A stretch of DNA of 64,000 bases from Podarcis cretensis. Its lineage: Eukaryota. Position numbers and translations under genes: made by a program. The notes under the pieces were generated by a model. It had not been told where the DNA came from. It made no database searches and worked only from the letters and a program-made list of their open reading frames with translations. How positions within the stretch are numbered: position 1 is the first letter of the stretch; each line of letters starts with the position of its first letter. Shown piece after piece: positions 7,227 through 62,851 of the stretch. The DNA lies in NCBI GenBank assembly GCA_951804945.1, contig OX638159.1, positions 48,608,001 to 48,672,000 of the forward strand, read 5' to 3'.

Positions 7227-8248
7227 CAGGCATGGCCAAACTTGGCCCTCCAGATGTTTTGGGACTACAACTCCAATCATCCCTAACTAACAGGACCAGT
7301 GGTCAGGGATGATGGGAATTGTGAGTGTCTGGAGGCGGTTGGAGGATGGATGGCGGCTAACAGATTGAGGTTGAATCCTGACAAGACAGAAGTGCTGTTT
7401 TTGGGGGACAGGAGGCGGGCAGGTGTGGAGAATTCCCTGGTCCTGAATGGGGTAACTGTGCCCCTGAAGGACCAGGTGCGCAGCCTGGGAGTCATTTTGG
7501 ACTCACAGCTGTCCATGGAGGCACAGATCAAATCTGTGTCCAGGGCAGCTGTTTACCAGCTCCATCTGGTACGTAGGCTGAGACCCTATCTGCCTGTGGA
7601 CTGTCTCGCCAGAGTGGTGCATGCTCTGGTTATCTCCCGCTTGGACTACTGCAATGCACTCTACGTGGGGCTACCTTTGAAGGTGACTCGGAAACTACAA
7701 CTAATCCAGAATGCGGCAGCTAGACTGGTGACTGGGAGCGGCCGCCGAGACCATATAACACCGGTCTTGAAAGACCTACATTGGCTCCCAGTACGTTTCC
7801 GAGCACAATTCAAAGTGTTGGTGCTGACCTTTAAAGCCCTAAACGGCCTCGGTCCAGTATACCTGAAGGAGCGTCTCCACCCCCATCATTCTGCCCGGAC
7901 GCTGAGGTCTAGCGCCGAGGGCCTTCTGGCGGTTCCCTCACTGCGAGAAGTAAAGCTACAGGGAACCAGGCAGAGGGCCTTCTCGGTAGTGGCGCCCGCC
8001 CTGTGGAACGCCCTTCCAGCAGATGTCAAAGCGATTAACAACTACCTGACATTCAGAAGACATCTTAAGGCAGCCCTGTTCAGGGAAGTTTTTAACGTGT
8101 GATATTTTATTGTATTTTTGCTTTCTATGGAAGCCGCCCAGAGTGGCTGGGGAGGCCCAGCCAGATGGGCGGGGTATAAATAATAAATTATTATTATTAT
8201 TATTATTGTAGTCCCAAAACAGCGGAGGGCCAAGTTTGGCCATGCCTG
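7227..8248. mobile_element. hAT (Charlie/Buster-type) MITE split by an L2 insertion
   Basis: Perfect 25-bp TIR CAGGCATGGCCAAACTTGGCCCTCC; exact 8-bp TSD GCATAACA (7219-7226, 8249-8256) with central TA. Confidence 0.92.
7323..8207 (+). mobile_element. 5'-truncated young L2-clade LINE (ORF2 C-terminal region, 3' UTR, (TTA)n tail)
   Basis: Uninterrupted frame to 8102 with L2-type motifs WMAANRLRLNPDKTE, SRLDYCNALY, QNAAARL, HITPVLKDLHWLP, AFSVVAPALWNALP; CpGs intact. Confidence 0.93.
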
Positions 8249-38900: not shown

Positions 38901-40361
38901 TGCGGAACAATTTCATTCTATTAAAACAACATTTATAAATCTATAATTTCCAAAATATTCTATATGTATCTTTTAAAATGCTACATATGCTACCGTTTAA
39001 TGTTAGGAGGCTTAACAAACTTTCAGATAAGTGACAGAGGCATCACCCAATTACACAAACAGCCTGGACGCAATCAATACCTATGGATTTGAAATTGATC
39101 TACTTTCGTTTTTAAAATATTAAAACTTCAGTCTAATTCTGCACAATTTTGACCCATTTCTCAGCCCAATCCTAAACATGTTTACTCAGAAGTATGCTGC
39201 ATCGACTTCAGTAGCACTTCCTTCAACATGTATGTTTTAGGACCGCAGGCTTAACTACAATTGATGAGGAGATTCCAAATTTAAGGTTTTTGGCCTTTAC
39301 AGTGGCAATCAACCACATAGATGTTTAGGCATCCGTGGTTGCAAAGTATCAACGTTTTAGTTCCCATGGAGCAACAACAGCTAACTATTTATCTTTTTAT
39401 GGAAAGCGAGATGGAAAAAAGGGAAATAAAGGTGGCACACGCTGCAGCCAGTGTACGTTGAGAGTTGGGCAGGTGTTTGCGTTCTGTCAGTCATCCAGAA
39501 AGGGCTACCTTTATTTTATCAACGCAGTAGTAGTAGCAGTAGTAGTAGTGAACGCATTCGAAAGGCCTTGCACAGAGCCAGCGACAATTAATCACCTCTC
39601 CAGCCAAACAAATTTGCCGTGTACACTCCAACTATCTGAACCGTCGGGATTGAGCAACGAAGGTTCGAAGGAAACATAGTTGCTGCCAACCATACACAGG
39701 GAGCGCGTGGGAGCGCCCGTCTCTCTCTCTCTCCGCCACCCCGCGCGATTTGGCTGGGACCTTTTCTTTCCCCTCCTTCCTCCCTCAGCTCAGCCCGCCG
39801 GTGTGAAGTTGTAAATATGGCACAGGTTCGGTGCCCCGGCCTCTGCTCCAACTGTATTGTTTCCTCCTCCCCGCTCTTGCTCTCGGGCGCCGAGGCCTGT
39901 CACACAGGAGCCACCTCGCCTCTCTAATCCCCGAGCTGGAGTGAACGCGCTGGCCGCTGGGCCTGCGCCCTCCTCCGGGCTTGGGCTCCTCCAGCAGCTC
40001 GGCAGAAACCATTCTCTCCTCCGCCAAACCCCGGGAGGAGGCGGAGGCGGGGAGAAACGTGAAAACACCCCCCACCCCTCGGCTGCCACTCATTATTTCT
40101 CTTCCCCTCACCCCCGCCGCCCCACTCCTCTCCTTTTTCCCACACCGGCCGAAAAGGCTAATTCCCCTGACTGGGCCGCCTCGCCTAAGAGGAGGCCCAG
40201 CTCGCGGCTTCCCTTTCGCGGAGGAGGAGGAAGAGGAGAAACCTGAAAGGGGGGGAAGAGGGGGGCTTTTACCTGAGCAAAACACCGTCTGAAGCCAACC
40301 GAAAGCCAAGCGGTGGCGGGGGGGGGAAGGAGGAAGGAGAAAAATCCGCCCCCCTCCCTCC

Positions 40362-40484
40362 TCAGAGGATCCGCCGCTGGGCCGCCGCGGAGCGAGAGGA
40401 GGAGGGGAGATAATATAACAACAATAATCCGGGCCGGGAGGGGGGCTGGCTCCTCTTCCGTCTCCTCCTCAGTGCAGCGAACAT
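40362..40484 (-). CDS. upstream ORF in NIPBL 5' UTR, 40 aa MFAALRRRRKRSQPPSRPGLLLLYYLPSSSRSAAAQRRIL
   Basis: ATG at 40484-40482, TGA ending 40362 (C-terminal part of track ORF 40362..40670). The first 20 codons lie in the best-conserved block of exon 1. Translation is not demonstrated. Confidence 0.5.
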   Translation of the reverse strand: MFAALRRRRKRSQPPSRPGLLLLYYLPSSSRSAAAQRRIL

Positions 40485-40562
40485 GTAGAGCCGGGGACGG
40501 GCGGGAGCGGCCGAAGCGAATCCCTTAAGTCGCCGCCGCCGTCGTCGTCTTTGCCGTCCTCC

Positions 40563-40651
40563 CCGCCGCCGCCGCCGCCGCCGTCCTCTTCTTCTTCTTC
40601 TTCTTCTTCCTCCTCCTCCTCCTCTTCTTCTTCTTCTTCCTTCCCCTCCTT
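40563..40651. repeat. compound (CCG)7 plus (TCT)n(TCC)n(TCT)n trinucleotide repeat in the 5' UTR
   Basis: CCG x7 at 40563-40583, then an uninterrupted 68-nt pyrimidine tract at 40584-40651. Confidence 0.95.
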
Positions 40652-40677
40652 GCCGTCGTCCTCCCACCAAGCCCGAT

Positions 40678-40692
40678 TCACGCCGCCAACAT
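40678..40692 (-). other. minimal uORF (MLAA-stop) in NIPBL 5' UTR
   Basis: Minus strand TGG ATG TTG GCG GCG TGA; weak Kozak context. Confidence 0.3.
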
Positions 40693-40743
40693 CCACACGG
40701 GCCGGGGCCGAGCCGGATTCGATAAACACCTCACGCACCGAAC

Positions 40744-40763
40744 GACCGACCGACCGACCGACC
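40744..40763. repeat. (GACC)5 microsatellite
   Basis: Directly visible. Confidence 0.9.
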
Positions 40764-41099
40764 AACCCCGGGAAGGGAGGGAGGAGAGGAGCGAGCGAGC
40801 GGGAGGGAGGGAGGAGGGAGGAGGGGGAATCTCCTCTGCCGCGGCTTGTTCCTTCTCTTCCGCCGCCGTCACCACCGCCGCCGCCTCTCCGCCTCCTCTG
40901 TGTACGCGGGCGGGTGGGGCGGGGCAGGGAGGGGACTGCTTAGGCCACGGTGAGTCGGTACCGGGGAGGGAGGAGATGGGGAGGGAGGAGAGAGAGAAGA
41001 GAGAGAGGGGAAAAGGAGCCTGCGTGAATGTGAGCGTCGGTCTCGCTCCCTCTCAGAACAAAATGCCGACCGGAAGTGCAGCTGTAGGAATGACTCCCT

Positions 41100-41946
41100 C
41101 CACCGGCGCCAAACACCAACAACCTCCCCTTTTTCTCTCTCCCTCTCCTTCTTCTGTTGCTGCTTCTGTTTCGCTTGCTCACTGCTTTCCTGCCTGCCTA
41201 AGCCGAGAGATCCATCCATGCACTCGCTGGGGAGCCTTTTCAGTCTGATGGCAGCTCCGAGTTGCGTATATGGGTGCTTTGCTGTTCTCTTTTTATCCGT
41301 TTTTCTTTCTTTCTTTCTTTCCCCCACTCCTCTCTTTTGCTGTATGTATATACGGAAGGCTGGAGTTTGCAAATAAAGGCCTGATGTTACGAGGAGAAGA
41401 TCTACGAACTGTCAAGATGAGGCACACGACTGAAATACTTCAGCAAAATAAATTGTCCATTTTTTTCTATCTTTTAAAAATGATAAAAGCCACATGAAGA
41501 GGATTGAAAATACGAAGAACTCCCAAGGAAGAGGATGAGTGGAAATTTAGAAAAGGGGGGTGGGGGAATACCTGCTGCATTCTTTCATATCCAGATGGAA
41601 TATTGGAAGCTTGTTTCTGCTTACGCCTGGTTTTCTTTTATTAAATTTCTCGTTCGTGCTTGCATGTGTGCTTTTATAAGGTGTTGATCCTGATCGCCAT
41701 ATCGTCGGATTTGAAGTTCTCACTGCTGAAAATTCTGGTTTCCAGATGGGCATGCTTTTCCAAAACCGTGTTTTCTGAAATAGCGTTGAGGGGGGAATCC
41801 GTGATATTGAAATGAAGGCTCCTTCGCTGGAAAATTGAGATGGTTGTTGACAGATTTCTTGCAAATAGTGTAATAATGGGTTGAGAAGGCAGCCTTGGAA
41901 GAAGGGGACATTGACGGACTTGAAAGCCTATCTATTTTCTCTTCAG
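41100..41946 (+). ncRNA. candidate divergent transcript (positional equivalent of NIPBL-DT)
   Basis: CpG-containing sequence continues beyond the TSS on the opposite strand. Candidate donor TTCAG|GTAAAT at 41946/41947; AATAAA at 41372 and 41447. Inferred from the human arrangement only. Confidence 0.3.
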
Positions 41947-43767
41947 GTAAATTGTTTTAGTTTGTGAGATTATGGAATAGGAACGAAATGGAATTCATAT
42001 AAATTGGCTTAAATGCCTGCTTTTTTCCAGTGCTTTGGAGCTCTCAAACTCCCCAAATATAATCAAGGTGCCAATTTTTAAATACAGTATTTCTACTTGA
42101 GTCAGTTTTCCATAATGCTCAGAGCTCAACCTCATGTAGTTGTTTGAATGTAGTAATCCAGGGCCACCCTCTGCCAGAAATTAGGCACTATGGCCCTGTT
42201 TCAAAAGAGCACATACAAACAAGATGTTCTTGTGTGTAGATGGGTATAGTTTTAAGGGTATAGTTTTAAGATTATGCATATTGTGCTATAGGAATATGAT
42301 TTTAGCTACTTGTAACATTCTGGGTTGTAAGTCTTTGAATATAAGGAAATAAATATACATATACTCCAGATTTAAAGACCTAGAATCCTGCTACAGTTAG
42401 TCATGACTAATGCCATACACACTTACCTGGGAATGATTCCCACTGAACACAGTAGGACTTCCTGACTAAATATGTGTAGGATCATATTGGACATGAAAAT
42501 TCAGTTTCATTTGTTTCAAAGAGATTTAGTAAAGACAAAATTAGACATATTTGCCAGGTAGTGACCCAAACGTGTTAGGTATCATTTATCCTGAAAAATA
42601 ATTGCACAGTTTGTAGAGAAGAGACTAACTTTTTAAATTGTATGTGTTTTCAAGTATTATTACAGGTAGCAGGTCCTAGATACCAAAGCAGTAGTATACC
42701 CACAAGCAGATTGTTTCGGTGCAGAAACTTAGGGGTAACGTATTTCTCCATTAACTAAAAGTGTCATTAAATTCTTCGTTTACTATATGTTTGGGAATTA
42801 TGGTATGGTGAATTTTTTTGATAAAAAATCCAGAATACCTGTCTTGTATAAAATATATAGGTTAAAATGTTATGAATTTAATTTCTTCACATAAGATGTA
42901 TTCTGAGAAAAATGTTGGTAAAAAGTATTTGCGGGCAATTTAAAGTATGTTGCAAAAAAAGCATAAGAATTAATCTCATATTTCATCTGTAAATTATTTA
43001 CAAGCTAAATACTTGTTTGGTCATAAACCGTATGTAGTTGTGCTCTTAAATTTAAATTTAGGGTGTTACTTAAATAAACCTAAGTAAATTCATGGACCTA
43101 ACTTAGTCATATTCATTAATTTCAGTGGGTCTACTCTGAGTAGTACCACCCTCTACAGGTTTTCATTCAGTCAGGTCTATACATTAAAACATAGTTTGAA
43201 GACTATAACAAAACAAGTTTAGTTAAATGTGGTTTTCTCAAATATTGAAATATTAATATATTTTAATAAGGCAGATCCAAAAAATATCTGCTCAGATACA
43301 CTTTGCCTTGTGCAGTCAGGATTTCCTTTTTAAAATGTAGACTGTTCATACTAAGTATAAATGTAAAGAGCCAAATTGTGCCCTCCTGTGGAAAAAGCAC
43401 AAAAAGCCCAGAAAACTTTTGAGTTATTTCTAGGCAACCTTAGCAGGAAATTCCCTTATTTGCAGAACTGTATTCTGAAAATGAATCCAGAAACAGACAC
43501 TAACATATCCATGCTGCCCTGTAATTAATACAGAAATCAGCACCGCTCTGAAAGTTTAGATGCAGGGTGAACAACATAAATACTGTACTGAGCATCATAT
43601 ATAATATCATGAGTTGCAGAGCTACAGCCTATTTACAAAGTTGTTTCTGAATGTATTAAGCATATTATTACCTGGTGACCAAAGCTCCTAGACCTGTTAT
43701 ACCTTTTGCATAATTTAATATAAGAATTTCAATTTAAAAAAAAATTCTATTGAAATTGATACTTCTA

Positions 43768-44410
43768 AAGGTAAAGGACCACTGGACGGTTAAGTCCAGT
43801 CAAATTTGACTATGGGGTGCGACGCTCATCTCGCTTCAGGCCAAGGTAGCTGGCATTTGTCCACAGACAGCATTAAGGGTCATGTGGCCAGCATGACTAT
43901 ACCACTTCTGGCACAGCAGGACACTGTGACGAGTGCCAGAGTGCACAGAAATGCTGCTTACCATCCCGCTGCAGCGGTTCCTACTTATCTACTCACGTTG
44001 GCATGCTTTGAACTGCTAAGGTTGGCGGGAGCTGGGACAGAGCAGCAAGAGCAAACTCCGTCACTCGGATTCAAACCACCAAGTGGGTGGTGCTGCGGTC
44101 TAAACCAGGGGTCAGCAAGGTTTATCTTGCCTGGGCCGGATCGGTCCGGCAGAGATCCCTCCCTGGGCTGGATCATGCGCCCGTGCAATTTTCGGCATCT
44201 GTGTCTGCGCAGACACAATTTTGAATTTCTGCGCATGCGCAGGTTTAATTTCTGGCACCGCAGAAGCGGGTCCCTGTGCCACACTGCGCCAGTTTATCAC
44301 AGCACGTGAGCGGGCAGCTCTGTTTGTGGGCCGCTTGAACGACCTCTGCGGGCTGCTTCCAGCCCATGGGCCTTAGGTTGCCGACCCCTGATCTAAACTA
44401 CTGAGCCTTT
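43768..44410 (-). mobile_element. Sauria SINE with inverted 5' head, interrupted by a hAT MITE
   Basis: Body and tail on minus strand 43768-44082; head on plus strand 44083-44105 and 44399-44410; flanking direct repeat TG(A/T)TACTTCTA. Confidence 0.85.
44106..44390. mobile_element. hAT (Charlie/Buster-type) MITE
   Basis: TIR CAGGGGTCAGCAA / TTGCCGACCCCTG; 8-bp TSD GTCTAAAC/ATCTAAAC. Confidence 0.9.
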
Positions 44411-45444
44411 TGTTACTTCTAGATGTCAGAAACATTACACCAGTCGTATCAGTAGTACAAAATGAGTAATACCCTCACTAAGAGAGTGTTGAGTTGGAAT
44501 ACCAAAATCTGGGTTCAAATTCTTACTTGACTCTGAAATTCACAGTGTAGCCTTGGGCAAGTTAACCAAGCCTAGCTTGCAAGAAGCCCAAATAATAGTC
44601 CTTTACTTTAAAGGTAAAGACTCAGGCAACAGCATTCATGAACACAATACATTTTTTTAGTCTTTAAGGTGTCACATGATCCTTTTTGTATTTGCTTTTA
44701 TACACTAACACACCTAACCCACTGGAATTTGCAATTTCACAGGATAAAGTGCTATTCTAACCTTGGGATACAAATGGAGCAATTTAAGTGCAACAAAGAG
44801 TTTTCTGGCGCCATAAAGACTAACAAGTTAAAATACATTTAACTTTTATTTAGATGGTAAATAGCTAATCCATATACTACTCTAATGCTTTTCAACTACT
44901 ACAGTGACAACTTGACTGGTACAAACCTACATGTCCAATATTTTATAATAAGGTTTTCACTCATTGCATACCTGCTTTGCTTGCCTTACATGTACAAATG
45001 TATCAACAAATAGCTTTTTAGACTGGAATATAATCTGGAATTGAAGATGATTAATTTGCATTTGTATAGCGTTTTGCAAGTTTAGGAAATACTTGGGTTA
45101 ATGGAATAATTTAAAGTAATAAGAATTGAGTGTTATCTAAGATAGTTTCATAGTTACTTTGTGTAAATATGTCAAAATATTCATGCAGCGGAGCAGAAAA
45201 ATATTCTTTTTTTTTCTTTTTTTTTGCATTTTGAACACATTCTTCTATTTGTCATGGTGTAATGTTTTTAGAATACAATAACCCTCTTTGGACATTTAAT
45301 TTCCCCACACAATTAATATCCCATGAGAAGGAGTAGGACTCTATCATGTCCTTGGGTCTGGGCCTACTTTACCACCCTCCATGCCCGGGGGGGGGGGGTG
45401 ACACCTTCTCCTGAATTCATGCAACTGGAAAAGGACAATTGAAA

Positions 45445-62191: not shown

Positions 62192-62511
62192 AATGACTAT
62201 TAGACAATGGGGCAAGAGTTGGTTGAGAAATTGACAAACCCCCTGTTTCTTAACAGGGGTCACCGTAGCAATATTAGCTAACTATAAATATAACAATGCA
62301 GAAGATATAAGGAAAGCTATATGCTGACATCTTTAATTAATGTGTGTGCATTGAGGAAGGGTCATAGCTCCCTAGCAGAATACATACTTTCCATGAAATT
62401 CCCATGCAATCTCTGGCATCTCCAACCAAGGGATAGCACAGGAGACCCAGTAGCAGGTGATGGGAAAGACCTTGTGAAACCACCATTTGTCAAAGTAGAC
62501 AATACTGGACT

Positions 62512-62851
62512 AGAAAGGGGTGATATGATAGCCATGTTCAAATATATAAAAGGATGTCACATAGAGGAGGGAGAAAGGTTGTTTTCTGCTGCTCCAGAAA
62601 AGCGGACACGGAGCAATGGATCCAAACTACAAGAAAAAAGATTCCACCTAAACATTAGGAAGAACTTCCTGACAGCAAGAGCTGTTCGACAGTGGAATTT
62701 GCTGCCAAGGAGTGTGGTGGAGTCTCCTTCTTTGGAGGTCTTTAAGCAGAGGCTTGACAACCATATGTCAGGAGTGCTCTGATGGTGTTTCCTGCTTGGC
62801 AGGGGGTTGGACTCGATGGCCCTTGTGGTCTCTTCCAACTCTATGATTCTA
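62512..62851 (+). mobile_element. CR1 LINE 3' fragment (ORF2 C-terminus and 3' UTR)
   Basis: RGDMIAMFKYIKG...RTRSNG-KL...RKNFLT-RAVRQWNLLP...SLEVFKQRLD is the CR1 ORF2 tail; ends CTCTATGATTCTA. Confidence 0.93.

What the first reader, a model, noticed from the sequence alone, without database searches (positions are those of the whole stretch)
40362..40484. Apparently amniote-conserved uORF with a basic NLS-like peptide in the NIPBL 5' UTR
Seen: exon 1 contains ATG TTC GCT GCA CTG AGG AGG AGA CGG AAG AGG AGC CAG CCC CCC TCC CGG CCC GGA TTA..., encoding MFAALRRRRKRSQPPSRPGL plus 20 more residues. Recalled, not looked up: the human UTR block reads as MFPALRRRKRSRSHPPSRPGL-stop, with the same ATG position and differences that are substitutions or 3- and 6-nt frame-preserving indels, while flanking UTR is unalignable. 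Established: NIPBL is strongly dosage-sensitive (Cornelia de Lange syndrome), and Arg/Lys- and Pro-rich nascent peptides can slow ribosomes. Inference: this may be a peptide-dependent translational rheostat on the cohesin loader, or a nuclear micropeptide. It is the strongest candidate for an undescribed regulatory system in this window.
Basis: partly seen in the sequence, partly recalled or inferred. Interest (0 to 1): 0.8.

Follow-up and report, generated by a model that had tools for sequence, protein, structure and literature searches.

The report
Conserved upstream ORF block, NIPBL leader
A short upstream reading frame in the probable first exon of a lizard's NIPBL gene is real and matches one already listed in the human gene, but the pattern of conservation points to a conserved DNA/RNA element rather than a working peptide.

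Summary
The ORF is there. It lies on the minus strand, ATG at 40484 and TGA at 40364-40362, 40 codons, inside a CpG island, 89 nt before a predicted CAG|GTAAAA donor.

ORF length alone means nothing: 65% of shuffles give an ATG ORF this long. Homology does mean something. A pattern built only from human bases implied by a published NIPBL variant table hits the window once, exactly on this ORF (chance about 1e-7). So this is the orthologue of the catalogued human 66-bp, weak-Kozak uORF at c.-200_-135.

Two ORF calls from other species, probably reptiles (P0001, P0002), share 33 invariant residues: RLY before the Met, plus codons 1-30.

The evidence leans against a functional peptide:
- Conservation starts upstream of the AUG and ends 10-15 codons before the stop.
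- The C-terminus varies (40, 42 and 45 aa here; 21 aa in human).
- All four codons comparable with human are identical, rare TTA included. The one visible difference (His/Gln) is non-synonymous.
- The start context is weak in all species.
- gnomAD carries frameshifts and an AUG loss in the human uORF.
- A second, ORF-less block at 41042-41113 is conserved just as perfectly.

Best reading: a nucleotide-level cis element holding a poorly used uAUG. The scan had not noted this locus before.

The parts
40362..40484 (-). The uORF: ATG 40484-40482, 40 sense codons, TGA 40364-40362; weak start context (T at -3, T at +4)
40395..40493 (-). Invariant block (RLY + codons 1-30, 33 residues) shared by the window and the two other species' ORF calls P0001 and P0002. 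It begins 9 nt upstream of the AUG (12 nt against P0001) and ends 10 codons before this species' stop
   Evidence: alignment A1
40424..40484 (-). Part orthologous to the human NIPBL 66-bp uORF (c.-200_-135): ATG, AGG at positions 16-18, CAGCCCCCC, and TTA 21 nt later. Lizard TTG (40424-40422) stands where human has the TAG stop
   Evidence: PMC12267970 Table S4; single hit, about 1e-7 expected
40365..40394 (-). Variable C-terminal part (R/C substitution; GCN and CGG triplet-repeat indels giving 40, 42 and 45 aa); absent from the human uORF
40270..40275 (-). Predicted exon-1 splice donor CAG|GTAAAA (last exon base 40273), 89 nt after the uORF stop. Predicted from sequence only, with no read support
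40273..41041 (-). Probable non-coding first exon of NIPBL. The 3' end is predicted and the 5' end (TSS) is undetermined. It holds only two ATGs (40692 and 40484) and several triplet microsatellites
   Evidence: human exon 1 is all 5'UTR and intron 1 is 76 kb
40678..40692 (-). 15-bp mini-uORF ATG TTG GCG GCG TGA with G at -3. It has the same length, Kozak class and order as the human 15-bp uORF whose frameshift causes CdLS. Homology not shown
   Evidence: for human
41042..41113 (-). Second perfectly conserved block against P0002 (24 of 24 residues in an arbitrary frame, so the DNA is near-identical too). It holds CACTTCCGGT (an ETS-type core) and no ATG. Candidate core-promoter or TSS-proximal element
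39500..41200 (.). CpG-island-like GC-rich region (GC 0.58-0.68 against 0.25-0.42 around it)

Best explanation
This is the lizard orthologue of the 66-bp, weak-Kozak uORF already listed in human NIPBL exon 1 (c.-200_-135). It sits inside a roughly 100-nt block that is strongly conserved. The constraint acts mainly on the nucleotide sequence, not on the encoded peptide. I read the block as a transcribed cis-regulatory element of the NIPBL CpG-island promoter and leader. It is either a DNA site cluster downstream of the TSS (an ETS-like CGGAAG core plus an AT-rich GGATTA / ATTGTT / AGATAA patch) or an RNA protein-binding site. My split is about 35% DNA and 25% RNA.

The uAUG is part of that block. 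Its weak context (T at -3, T at +4) means most scanning ribosomes pass it. At most it causes mild, sequence-independent dampening, with reinitiation or leaky scanning to the main AUG in exon 2.

Shown: the ORF, its homology with human, its invariance in three species, the mismatch between block and ORF boundaries, and the weak context. Inferred: that the exon is transcribed as drawn in this lizard, that the element acts on DNA or RNA, and that translation is low.
For: 1. Orthology with human NIPBL. A pattern from the bases implied by PMC12267970 Table S4 hits the window once, at 40424-40484 minus. There were 0 hits in 20000 shuffles, and the analytic expectation is about 1e-7.

2. Codon comparison with human. 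The four codons that can be compared and encode the same residue are identical: AGG, CCC, CCC and the rare TTA. That has p about 0.002 if synonymous choice were free. The only visible difference, CAC (His) against CAG (Gln), is non-synonymous.

3. Block boundaries. The invariant block starts 9-12 nt upstream of the AUG (RLY or PRLY identical in frame) and stops at codon 30, 10-15 codons before the stop.

4. Variable stop and C-terminus. The uORF is 40, 42 and 45 aa in the three species and 21 aa in human, where the TAG stands at the lizard's TTG. The in-frame indels lie in GCN and CGG triplet repeats, so they are in phase by nature.

5. ORF-less control. A block at 41042-41113 with no ATG is just as perfectly conserved when read in an arbitrary frame. 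A perfect 'peptide' match is therefore not diagnostic of coding here.

6. Weak context everywhere. Tyr before Met and Phe after it force T at -3 and T at +4 in all three species. Human is rated weak as well.

7. Human population data. gnomAD holds five frameshift variants, one uAUG loss and one stop loss in the human 66-bp uORF. The authors judge it unlikely to be strongly translated.

8. No family or structure signal. There is no Pfam family, no Rfam family above threshold and no unusual RNA stability (z = -1.05).
Against: The AUG is retained in human and in three other species. The net length difference between the AUG and the CA.CCCCCC motif is exactly 3 nt, so the frame is preserved. That fits selection on a reading frame.

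The synonymous-site test rests on only four codons, and the human bases were inferred from variant rows.

No DNA of P0001 or P0002 could be fetched, so synonymous change among those species is unknown. No TF-binding, RNA-binding, CAGE, RNA-seq or Ribo-seq data were available. The TSS and the donor in this lizard are predictions. Nucleotide-level and peptide-level constraint are not mutually exclusive.
Confidence: 0.58

Rival explanations
1. Conserved-peptide regulatory uORF. The uORF is translated, and its basic and proline-rich nascent peptide (RRRRKRSQPPSRPG) slows or stalls the ribosome. That blocks scanning and tunes NIPBL output.
For: The AUG and frame are retained between human and lizard. 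Thirty invariant codons are shared by three species whose flanks diverge or cannot be aligned. The NIPBL leader is demonstrably sensitive to uORFs: uAUG-creating and uORF-extending variants cause CdLS. From general knowledge, polybasic and Pro-Pro stretches can slow elongation.
Against: In known stalling CPuORFs the C-terminal region next to the stop matters (PMC7530721). Here that region is the least conserved, and the stop position differs between human and lizard. Codons comparable with human are identical at synonymous sites, and the one change seen is non-synonymous. Conservation extends upstream of the AUG. The context is weak in all species. Frameshifts within the human uORF occur in gnomAD controls although NIPBL is haploinsufficient. 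No footprint data were available.
Confidence: 0.13
2. Generic uORF. Selection keeps an AUG and a stop here as a sequence-independent brake or reinitiation spacer in a multi-uORF leader. The peptide and the exact nucleotides are irrelevant.
For: The AUG is kept in four species. The human leader has five predicted uORFs, one with a strong context in exon 2. The lizard exon also has a 15-bp mini-uORF upstream in the same order as in human.
Against: This does not explain why about 100 nt are invariant while length and stop position vary. The weak context predicts a small effect. An AUG-loss allele and frameshift alleles exist in gnomAD.
Confidence: 0.2
3. Stand-alone nuclear micropeptide: the 21-45 aa product is stable and enters the nucleus through its RRRRKR motif.
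For: RRRRKR fits the classical K-K/R-X-K/R pattern.
Against: There is no Pfam family. No relatives were found other than the two orthologous ORF calls among 1.84 billion representatives. The peptide's length halves between lineages. The start context is weak. The peptide is printed in no searchable paper. NIPBL does not appear in the held parts of two sORF catalogues, though some of those files were cut when stored.
Confidence: 0.03
4. Chance ORF in GC-rich DNA with no constraint at all.
For: 65% of shuffled exons give an ATG ORF of at least 40 codons. All six frames are open around it.
Against: The match to the human uORF has a chance expectation of about 1e-7. Thirty-three residues are invariant in three species while P0001's flank cannot be aligned.
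Confidence: 0.02

Closest known systems
Human NIPBL exon-1 uORF of 66 bp (c.-200_-135, weak Kozak), one of five predicted uORFs in the NIPBL 5'UTR (PMC12267970, Fig. 3a and Table S4)
   Same: Same gene position (non-coding exon 1), same AUG, and the same anchor bases at the same spacing: AGG at positions 16-18, CA.CCCCCC, and TTA 21 nt later. The start context is weak in both.
   Different: Human stops after 21 codons (TAG) where the lizard reads TTG and runs on to 40 codons. There is one net in-frame 3-nt difference and a His/Gln difference. In human it is only a predicted uORF, and the authors consider it poorly translated.
Disease-causing uORF changes in the NIPBL leader (c.-467C>T, c.-457_-456delinsAT, c.-94C>T, c.-321_-320delinsA, c.-315del)
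   Same: Same leader. They show that NIPBL output is sensitive to upstream translation.
   Different: Those variants create new uAUGs (two of the three in strong or moderate context) or lengthen another, moderate-context 15-bp uORF. None lies in the uORF studied here, and variants disrupting this one are found in gnomAD controls.
Conserved-peptide uORFs with sequence-dependent ribosome stalling (e.g. AZIN1, PTP4A1; ESUCA catalogue, PMC7530721)
   Same: An AUG uORF whose N-terminal residues are retained across distant vertebrates, in a dosage-sensitive regulator.
   Different: The C-terminus and stop are not conserved. Synonymous sites appear as constrained as non-synonymous ones. The context is poor. 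No frameshift-sensitivity data exist. Whether NIPBL is in the ESUCA list could not be checked, because no supplement is held.
Promoter-proximal conserved non-coding blocks in CpG-island first exons
   Same: A sharply bounded invariant block in an otherwise fast-evolving, microsatellite-rich leader. Its boundaries ignore the ORF. A sister block 550 nt upstream carries an ETS-type CACTTCCGGT.
   Different: No binding or accessibility data were obtained. The block holds a conserved AUG, which such elements need not have.

Membership tests
Orthologue of the human NIPBL 66-bp uORF | Same anchor bases and spacing as the human uORF (ATG; AGG at positions 16-18; CA.CCCCCC; TTA 21 nt later) | tested here: met
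   Bases taken from Table S4 of PMC12267970. The pattern hits only 40424-40484 minus, with about 1e-7 expected by chance.
Orthologue of the human NIPBL 66-bp uORF | Lies in the non-coding first exon of NIPBL, upstream of a long intron 1 | tested here: inconclusive
   There is a CpG island, a predicted donor at 40273 and no NIPBL coding start in the window. This fits the 76-kb human intron 1. No RNA reads could be laid and no NIPBL coding exon is in the window.
uORF (upstream ORF of a mature mRNA) | AUG and in-frame stop inside the transcribed 5' leader | tested here: inconclusive
   The ORF is present. In human it lies inside the MANE 5'UTR. In this lizard the TSS is unknown. Twelve small 'RNA?' contig runs hold 66-79% of the words of 40250-40950, but their kind is a guess.
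Conserved-peptide uORF (CPuORF), sequence-dependent regulator | Amino-acid conservation beyond nucleotide conservation (synonymous change exceeds non-synonymous change) | tested here: not met
   Only a small sample was possible. The four codons comparable with human are identical and the single visible change is non-synonymous. DNA of P0001 and P0002 was not obtainable.
Conserved-peptide uORF (CPuORF), sequence-dependent regulator | Conserved C-terminal region and stop position, where stalling peptides act | tested here: not met
   The C-terminus varies (40, 42 and 45 aa) and the human stop comes at codon 22. The criterion is taken from PMC7530721.
Conserved-peptide uORF (CPuORF), sequence-dependent regulator | A frameshift of the uORF relieves repression of the main ORF | not testable with these tools
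   This needs reporter assays. The indirect hint is against it: frameshift alleles occur in gnomAD.
Translated uORF | Ribosome footprints or initiation peaks at the uAUG | not testable with these tools
   No Ribo-seq data were reachable. NIPBL was not found in the held parts of the supplements of PMC10032668 and PMC4568590. Five of the seven PMC10032668 files were cut when stored, so this is no evidence of absence.
Classical monopartite NLS | K-K/R-X-K/R basic cluster | tested here: met
   RRRRKR at residues 6-11. A pattern match only; it says nothing about function.

The most novel reading that the evidence does not exclude
The first ~20 codons encode a peptide kept for over 300 million years in the leader of the cohesin loader. 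Its basic and proline-rich nascent chain acts inside the ribosome to set NIPBL dosage, and the nucleotide-level constraint seen here is a second, overlapping layer.
Probability: 0.12. Interest if true: 0.6.

Novelty: new member of a known kind. Interest (0 to 1): 0.3.

Why it matters
NIPBL dosage is critical. Loss of one copy causes Cornelia de Lange syndrome, and new or lengthened uORFs in this same leader are proven disease mechanisms (PMC12267970, PMC12464522).

Part of exon 1 is invariant between lizards, and at every base that could be checked it matches human. This marks about 100 nt of the 5'UTR as functionally constrained. That could help in interpreting non-coding patient variants around c.-200 to c.-135.

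The practical message is a caution. In this block a variant may matter because it changes a DNA or RNA element, not because it changes a 'uORF peptide'. Annotating it only as uAUG-lost or uFrameshift may then miss the point. For the scan, it shows that an ORF-shaped conserved block in a GC-rich leader is not by itself evidence of a micropeptide.

Tried and rejected
1. NIPBL coding start in the window: no MNGDMP / HVPITTL / GIASLTD motif in six frames. Exon 2 is presumably outside, since human intron 1 is 76 kb.

No DNA could be fetched for the uORF or for P0001 and P0002, so there is no dN/dS among these species.

One retry beside those places, as the tool's message advised, was stopped by the cap. 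So there is no depth, TSS, splice-joint or variant data.

4. Protein searches. The 40-aa query found nothing. The 102-aa ORF with region 63-102 found P0001 only. P0002 with region 181-225 found only P0001 and P0002. The HMMER search of 1.84 billion representatives found the same two. None of these can see a 20-residue block at about 75% identity, or ORFs that were never called. The absence of bird, turtle or mammal hits therefore means nothing.

5. The listing of cluster members on P0001 gave no organism or accession.

6. Pfam, Rfam and RNA folding (z = -1.05) gave nothing.

7. Literature. Coursimault 2022 is not held. The ESUCA supplement is not held. NIPBL was not found in the held parts of the Sandmann 2023 and Mackowiak 2015 supplements. 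The peptide strings appear in no searchable paper.

8. Earlier scan notes have nothing on NIPBL, cohesin, SLC1A3, NUP155, CPLANE1 or GDNF.

9. DNA-pattern scans of the metagenome and prokaryote-genome collections were not run. Only host contamination could match, and it would most likely be human, which I may not keep or compare.

10. No human contig was fetched or compared. The human comparison rests only on published variant tables. The window has no N runs.

Full report
**What is in the sequence**

The window holds an ATG ORF on the minus strand. The ATG is at 40484-40482, followed by 40 sense codons (MFAALRRRRKRSQPPSRPGLLLLYYLPSSSRSAAAQRRIL) and a TGA at 40364-40362.

The ORF lies in a GC-rich, CpG-island-like stretch at about 39500-41200. 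GC there is 0.58-0.68, against 0.25-0.42 around it. The stretch is rich in triplet microsatellites.

On the sense strand only two ATGs occur between 41200 and 40273: this one, and a 15-bp mini-ORF at 40692-40678. The start context is ctctacATGt, with no purine at -3 and no G at +4. A good donor, CAG|GTAAAA, follows 89 nt after the stop, with 40273 as the last exon base. The window has no N runs.

**Is it more than chance?**

As an ORF, no. 65% of dinucleotide shuffles of the exon give an ATG ORF of 40 codons or more, and all six frames are open for about 100 codons here.

As a homologue, yes. The window holds no NIPBL coding exon. That is expected, because human intron 1 is 76 kb, so gene identity had to be tested another way.

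Table S4 of PMC12267970 lists gnomAD variants in the human NIPBL 5'UTR with VCF and HGVS descriptions. Using c.-N = 36877258 - N in exon 1, these rows fix several bases of the human '66-bp uORF, weak Kozak':
- ATG at c.-200..-198 (c.-199T>A is annotated uAUG_lost).
- AGG at uORF positions 16-18, followed by a non-G (c.-183dup, REF A at 36877073).
- CACCCCCCC at positions 40-48, followed by a non-C (c.-160del, and c.-153dup/del).
- TTA TAG at positions 61-66 (c.-139_-136dup, and c.-135G>C annotated uSTOP_lost).

A pattern made only of these bases, with a loose gap, hits the 64-kb window once: at 40424-40484 on the minus strand. There were no hits in 20000 shuffles of the island, and the analytic expectation is about 1e-7.

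So the lizard ORF is the orthologue of that human NIPBL uORF. The distance from the ATG to the CA.CCCCCC motif is 3 nt shorter in the lizard, which keeps the frame. The distance from that motif to TTA is identical.

An unchecked scan note places SHLD3/TRAPPC13 8.9 Mb away on the same piece. From my own memory, NIPBL and those genes share a chromosome in sauropsids. This is a weak hint only.

**Relatives found with tools**

The word searches and the full HMMER search of 1.84 billion representatives found exactly two relatives. Both are anonymous ORF calls on Logan contigs: P0001 (141 aa) and P0002 (225 aa).

Their upstream parts show that they come from other species:
- P0002 aligns to the window's promoter and leader only with frameshifts and many changes.
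- The first 84 residues of P0001 match the window in no frame.

Nevertheless, alignment A1 shows 33 invariant residues in a row: RLY, then Met1 to Ser30. After that come an R/C change and indels in GCN and CGG triplet repeats. The resulting uORFs are 40, 42 and 45 codons long.

The taxa are unknown; scan notes call this genome a lizard. No bird, turtle, crocodilian or mammalian sequence could be obtained. These searches cannot detect a 20-residue block or ORFs that were never called, so this absence carries no weight.

**Peptide or nucleotides?**

Several independent observations point away from the peptide.

1. The conserved block does not coincide with the ORF. It begins 9-12 nt upstream of the AUG. 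It ends 10-15 codons before the stop in these species, yet runs past the human stop.

2. The stop is not conserved. Human TAG corresponds to lizard TTG, so the product is 21 aa in human and 40-45 aa here. In known peptide-dependent stalling uORFs the C-terminal region next to the stop matters (PMC7530721). Here it is the least conserved part.

3. Where human codons are known and encode the same residue, they are identical: AGG, CCC, CCC, and TTA. TTA is the rarest Leu codon and stands out in a GC-rich island. With free synonymous choice this has p of about 0.002. The flanks cannot be aligned, so neutral sites are saturated. The one difference visible, CAC (His) against CAG (Gln), is non-synonymous.

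4. A second block, 41042-41113, has no ATG and reads as 24 of 24 identical residues in an arbitrary frame against P0002. It holds an ETS-type CACTTCCGGT. Perfect 'peptide' identity therefore arises here from DNA conservation alone.

5. The weak start context is itself conserved. Tyr before Met and Phe after it force T at -3 and T at +4 in all three species. The human context is rated weak.

6. In human, gnomAD holds five frameshift variants, one AUG loss and one stop loss in this uORF. By contrast, CdLS-causing leader variants create uAUGs (two of the three in strong or moderate context) or lengthen a different, moderate-context 15-bp uORF. [quoted passage not shown]

In favour of a reading frame there remain the retained AUG and a single in-frame net indel. 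That indel lies in an AGG/AGA/AAG purine run, where triplet slippage is natural.

Pfam, Rfam and RNA folding gave nothing.

**Mechanism I commit to (58%)**

The block is a nucleotide-level cis element of the NIPBL promoter and leader. The uAUG is embedded in it and is used rarely, so it acts at most as a mild, sequence-independent brake.

I cannot separate a DNA role from an RNA role. A DNA role would be a site cluster downstream of the TSS: CGGAAG, GGATTA, ATTGTT, and AGATAA on the other strand. An RNA role would be a purine-rich or AT-rich protein-binding site. I put the split at about 35% DNA and 25% RNA.

The rivals are a peptide-dependent regulatory uORF (13%), a generic uORF kept only for its AUG and stop (20%), a nuclear micropeptide (3%) and a chance ORF (2%, already refuted).

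A retry beside those places was blocked by the cap. I have no transcript evidence in this lizard, so the TSS and donor are predictions.
- Twelve small runs of one organism, from three studies, hold 66-79% of the words of 40250-40950. That would fit either expression or open chromatin, and their kind is only guessed.
- I fetched no human contig. The human comparison uses published tables only.
- Coursimault 2022 and the ESUCA supplementary list could not be read. I therefore cannot exclude that this uORF's conservation has already been tabulated.

**Verdict**

The feature is real, conserved and correctly located. It is the orthologue of a catalogued human uORF. The proposed peptide rheostat or NLS micropeptide is not supported, and the available evidence leans against it. 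Interest is moderate to low (0.3). I class it as a new member of a known kind.

Noticed in passing
window 41042-41113 (minus): A second sharply conserved block: 24 of 24 residues identical to P0002 in an arbitrary frame. It holds CACTTCCGGT (an ETS-type core) and has no ATG on the sense strand. Candidate core-promoter or TSS-proximal element of the same gene.
   Followed up: partly
window 40678-40692 (minus): A 15-bp mini-uORF (ATG TTG GCG GCG TGA, G at -3). It has the same length, Kozak class and order as the human 15-bp NIPBL uORF whose frameshift (c.-315del, c.-321_-320delinsA) causes CdLS. The peptide differs (MLAA against MPP.), and homology is not shown.
   Followed up: partly
window 40540-40830 (minus-strand leader): The leader between the two ATGs is built largely of triplet and short repeats: (GAA/GAG)n at 40587-40650, (GGC)n, (GGTC)n near 40745-40765, and GGAGGGA repeats at 40776-40825. 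They are much shorter or absent in P0002 and P0001, so the leader's length evolves fast around the fixed blocks.
   Followed up: partly
The tool says the filter also trips by chance and is no evidence of anything. I did not examine them further and sent them to no search tool.
   Followed up: no
window 7299-8102 (+) and 62321-62782 (+): Long ORFs that look to me like retrotransposon (LINE) reverse-transcriptase tails. Pfam gave no family above threshold, so the label is unverified.
   Followed up: partly
window 43757-44421: A second GC-rich patch (GC about 0.53). An earlier scan note calls it a Sauria SINE invaded by a hAT MITE. Not examined here.
   Followed up: no
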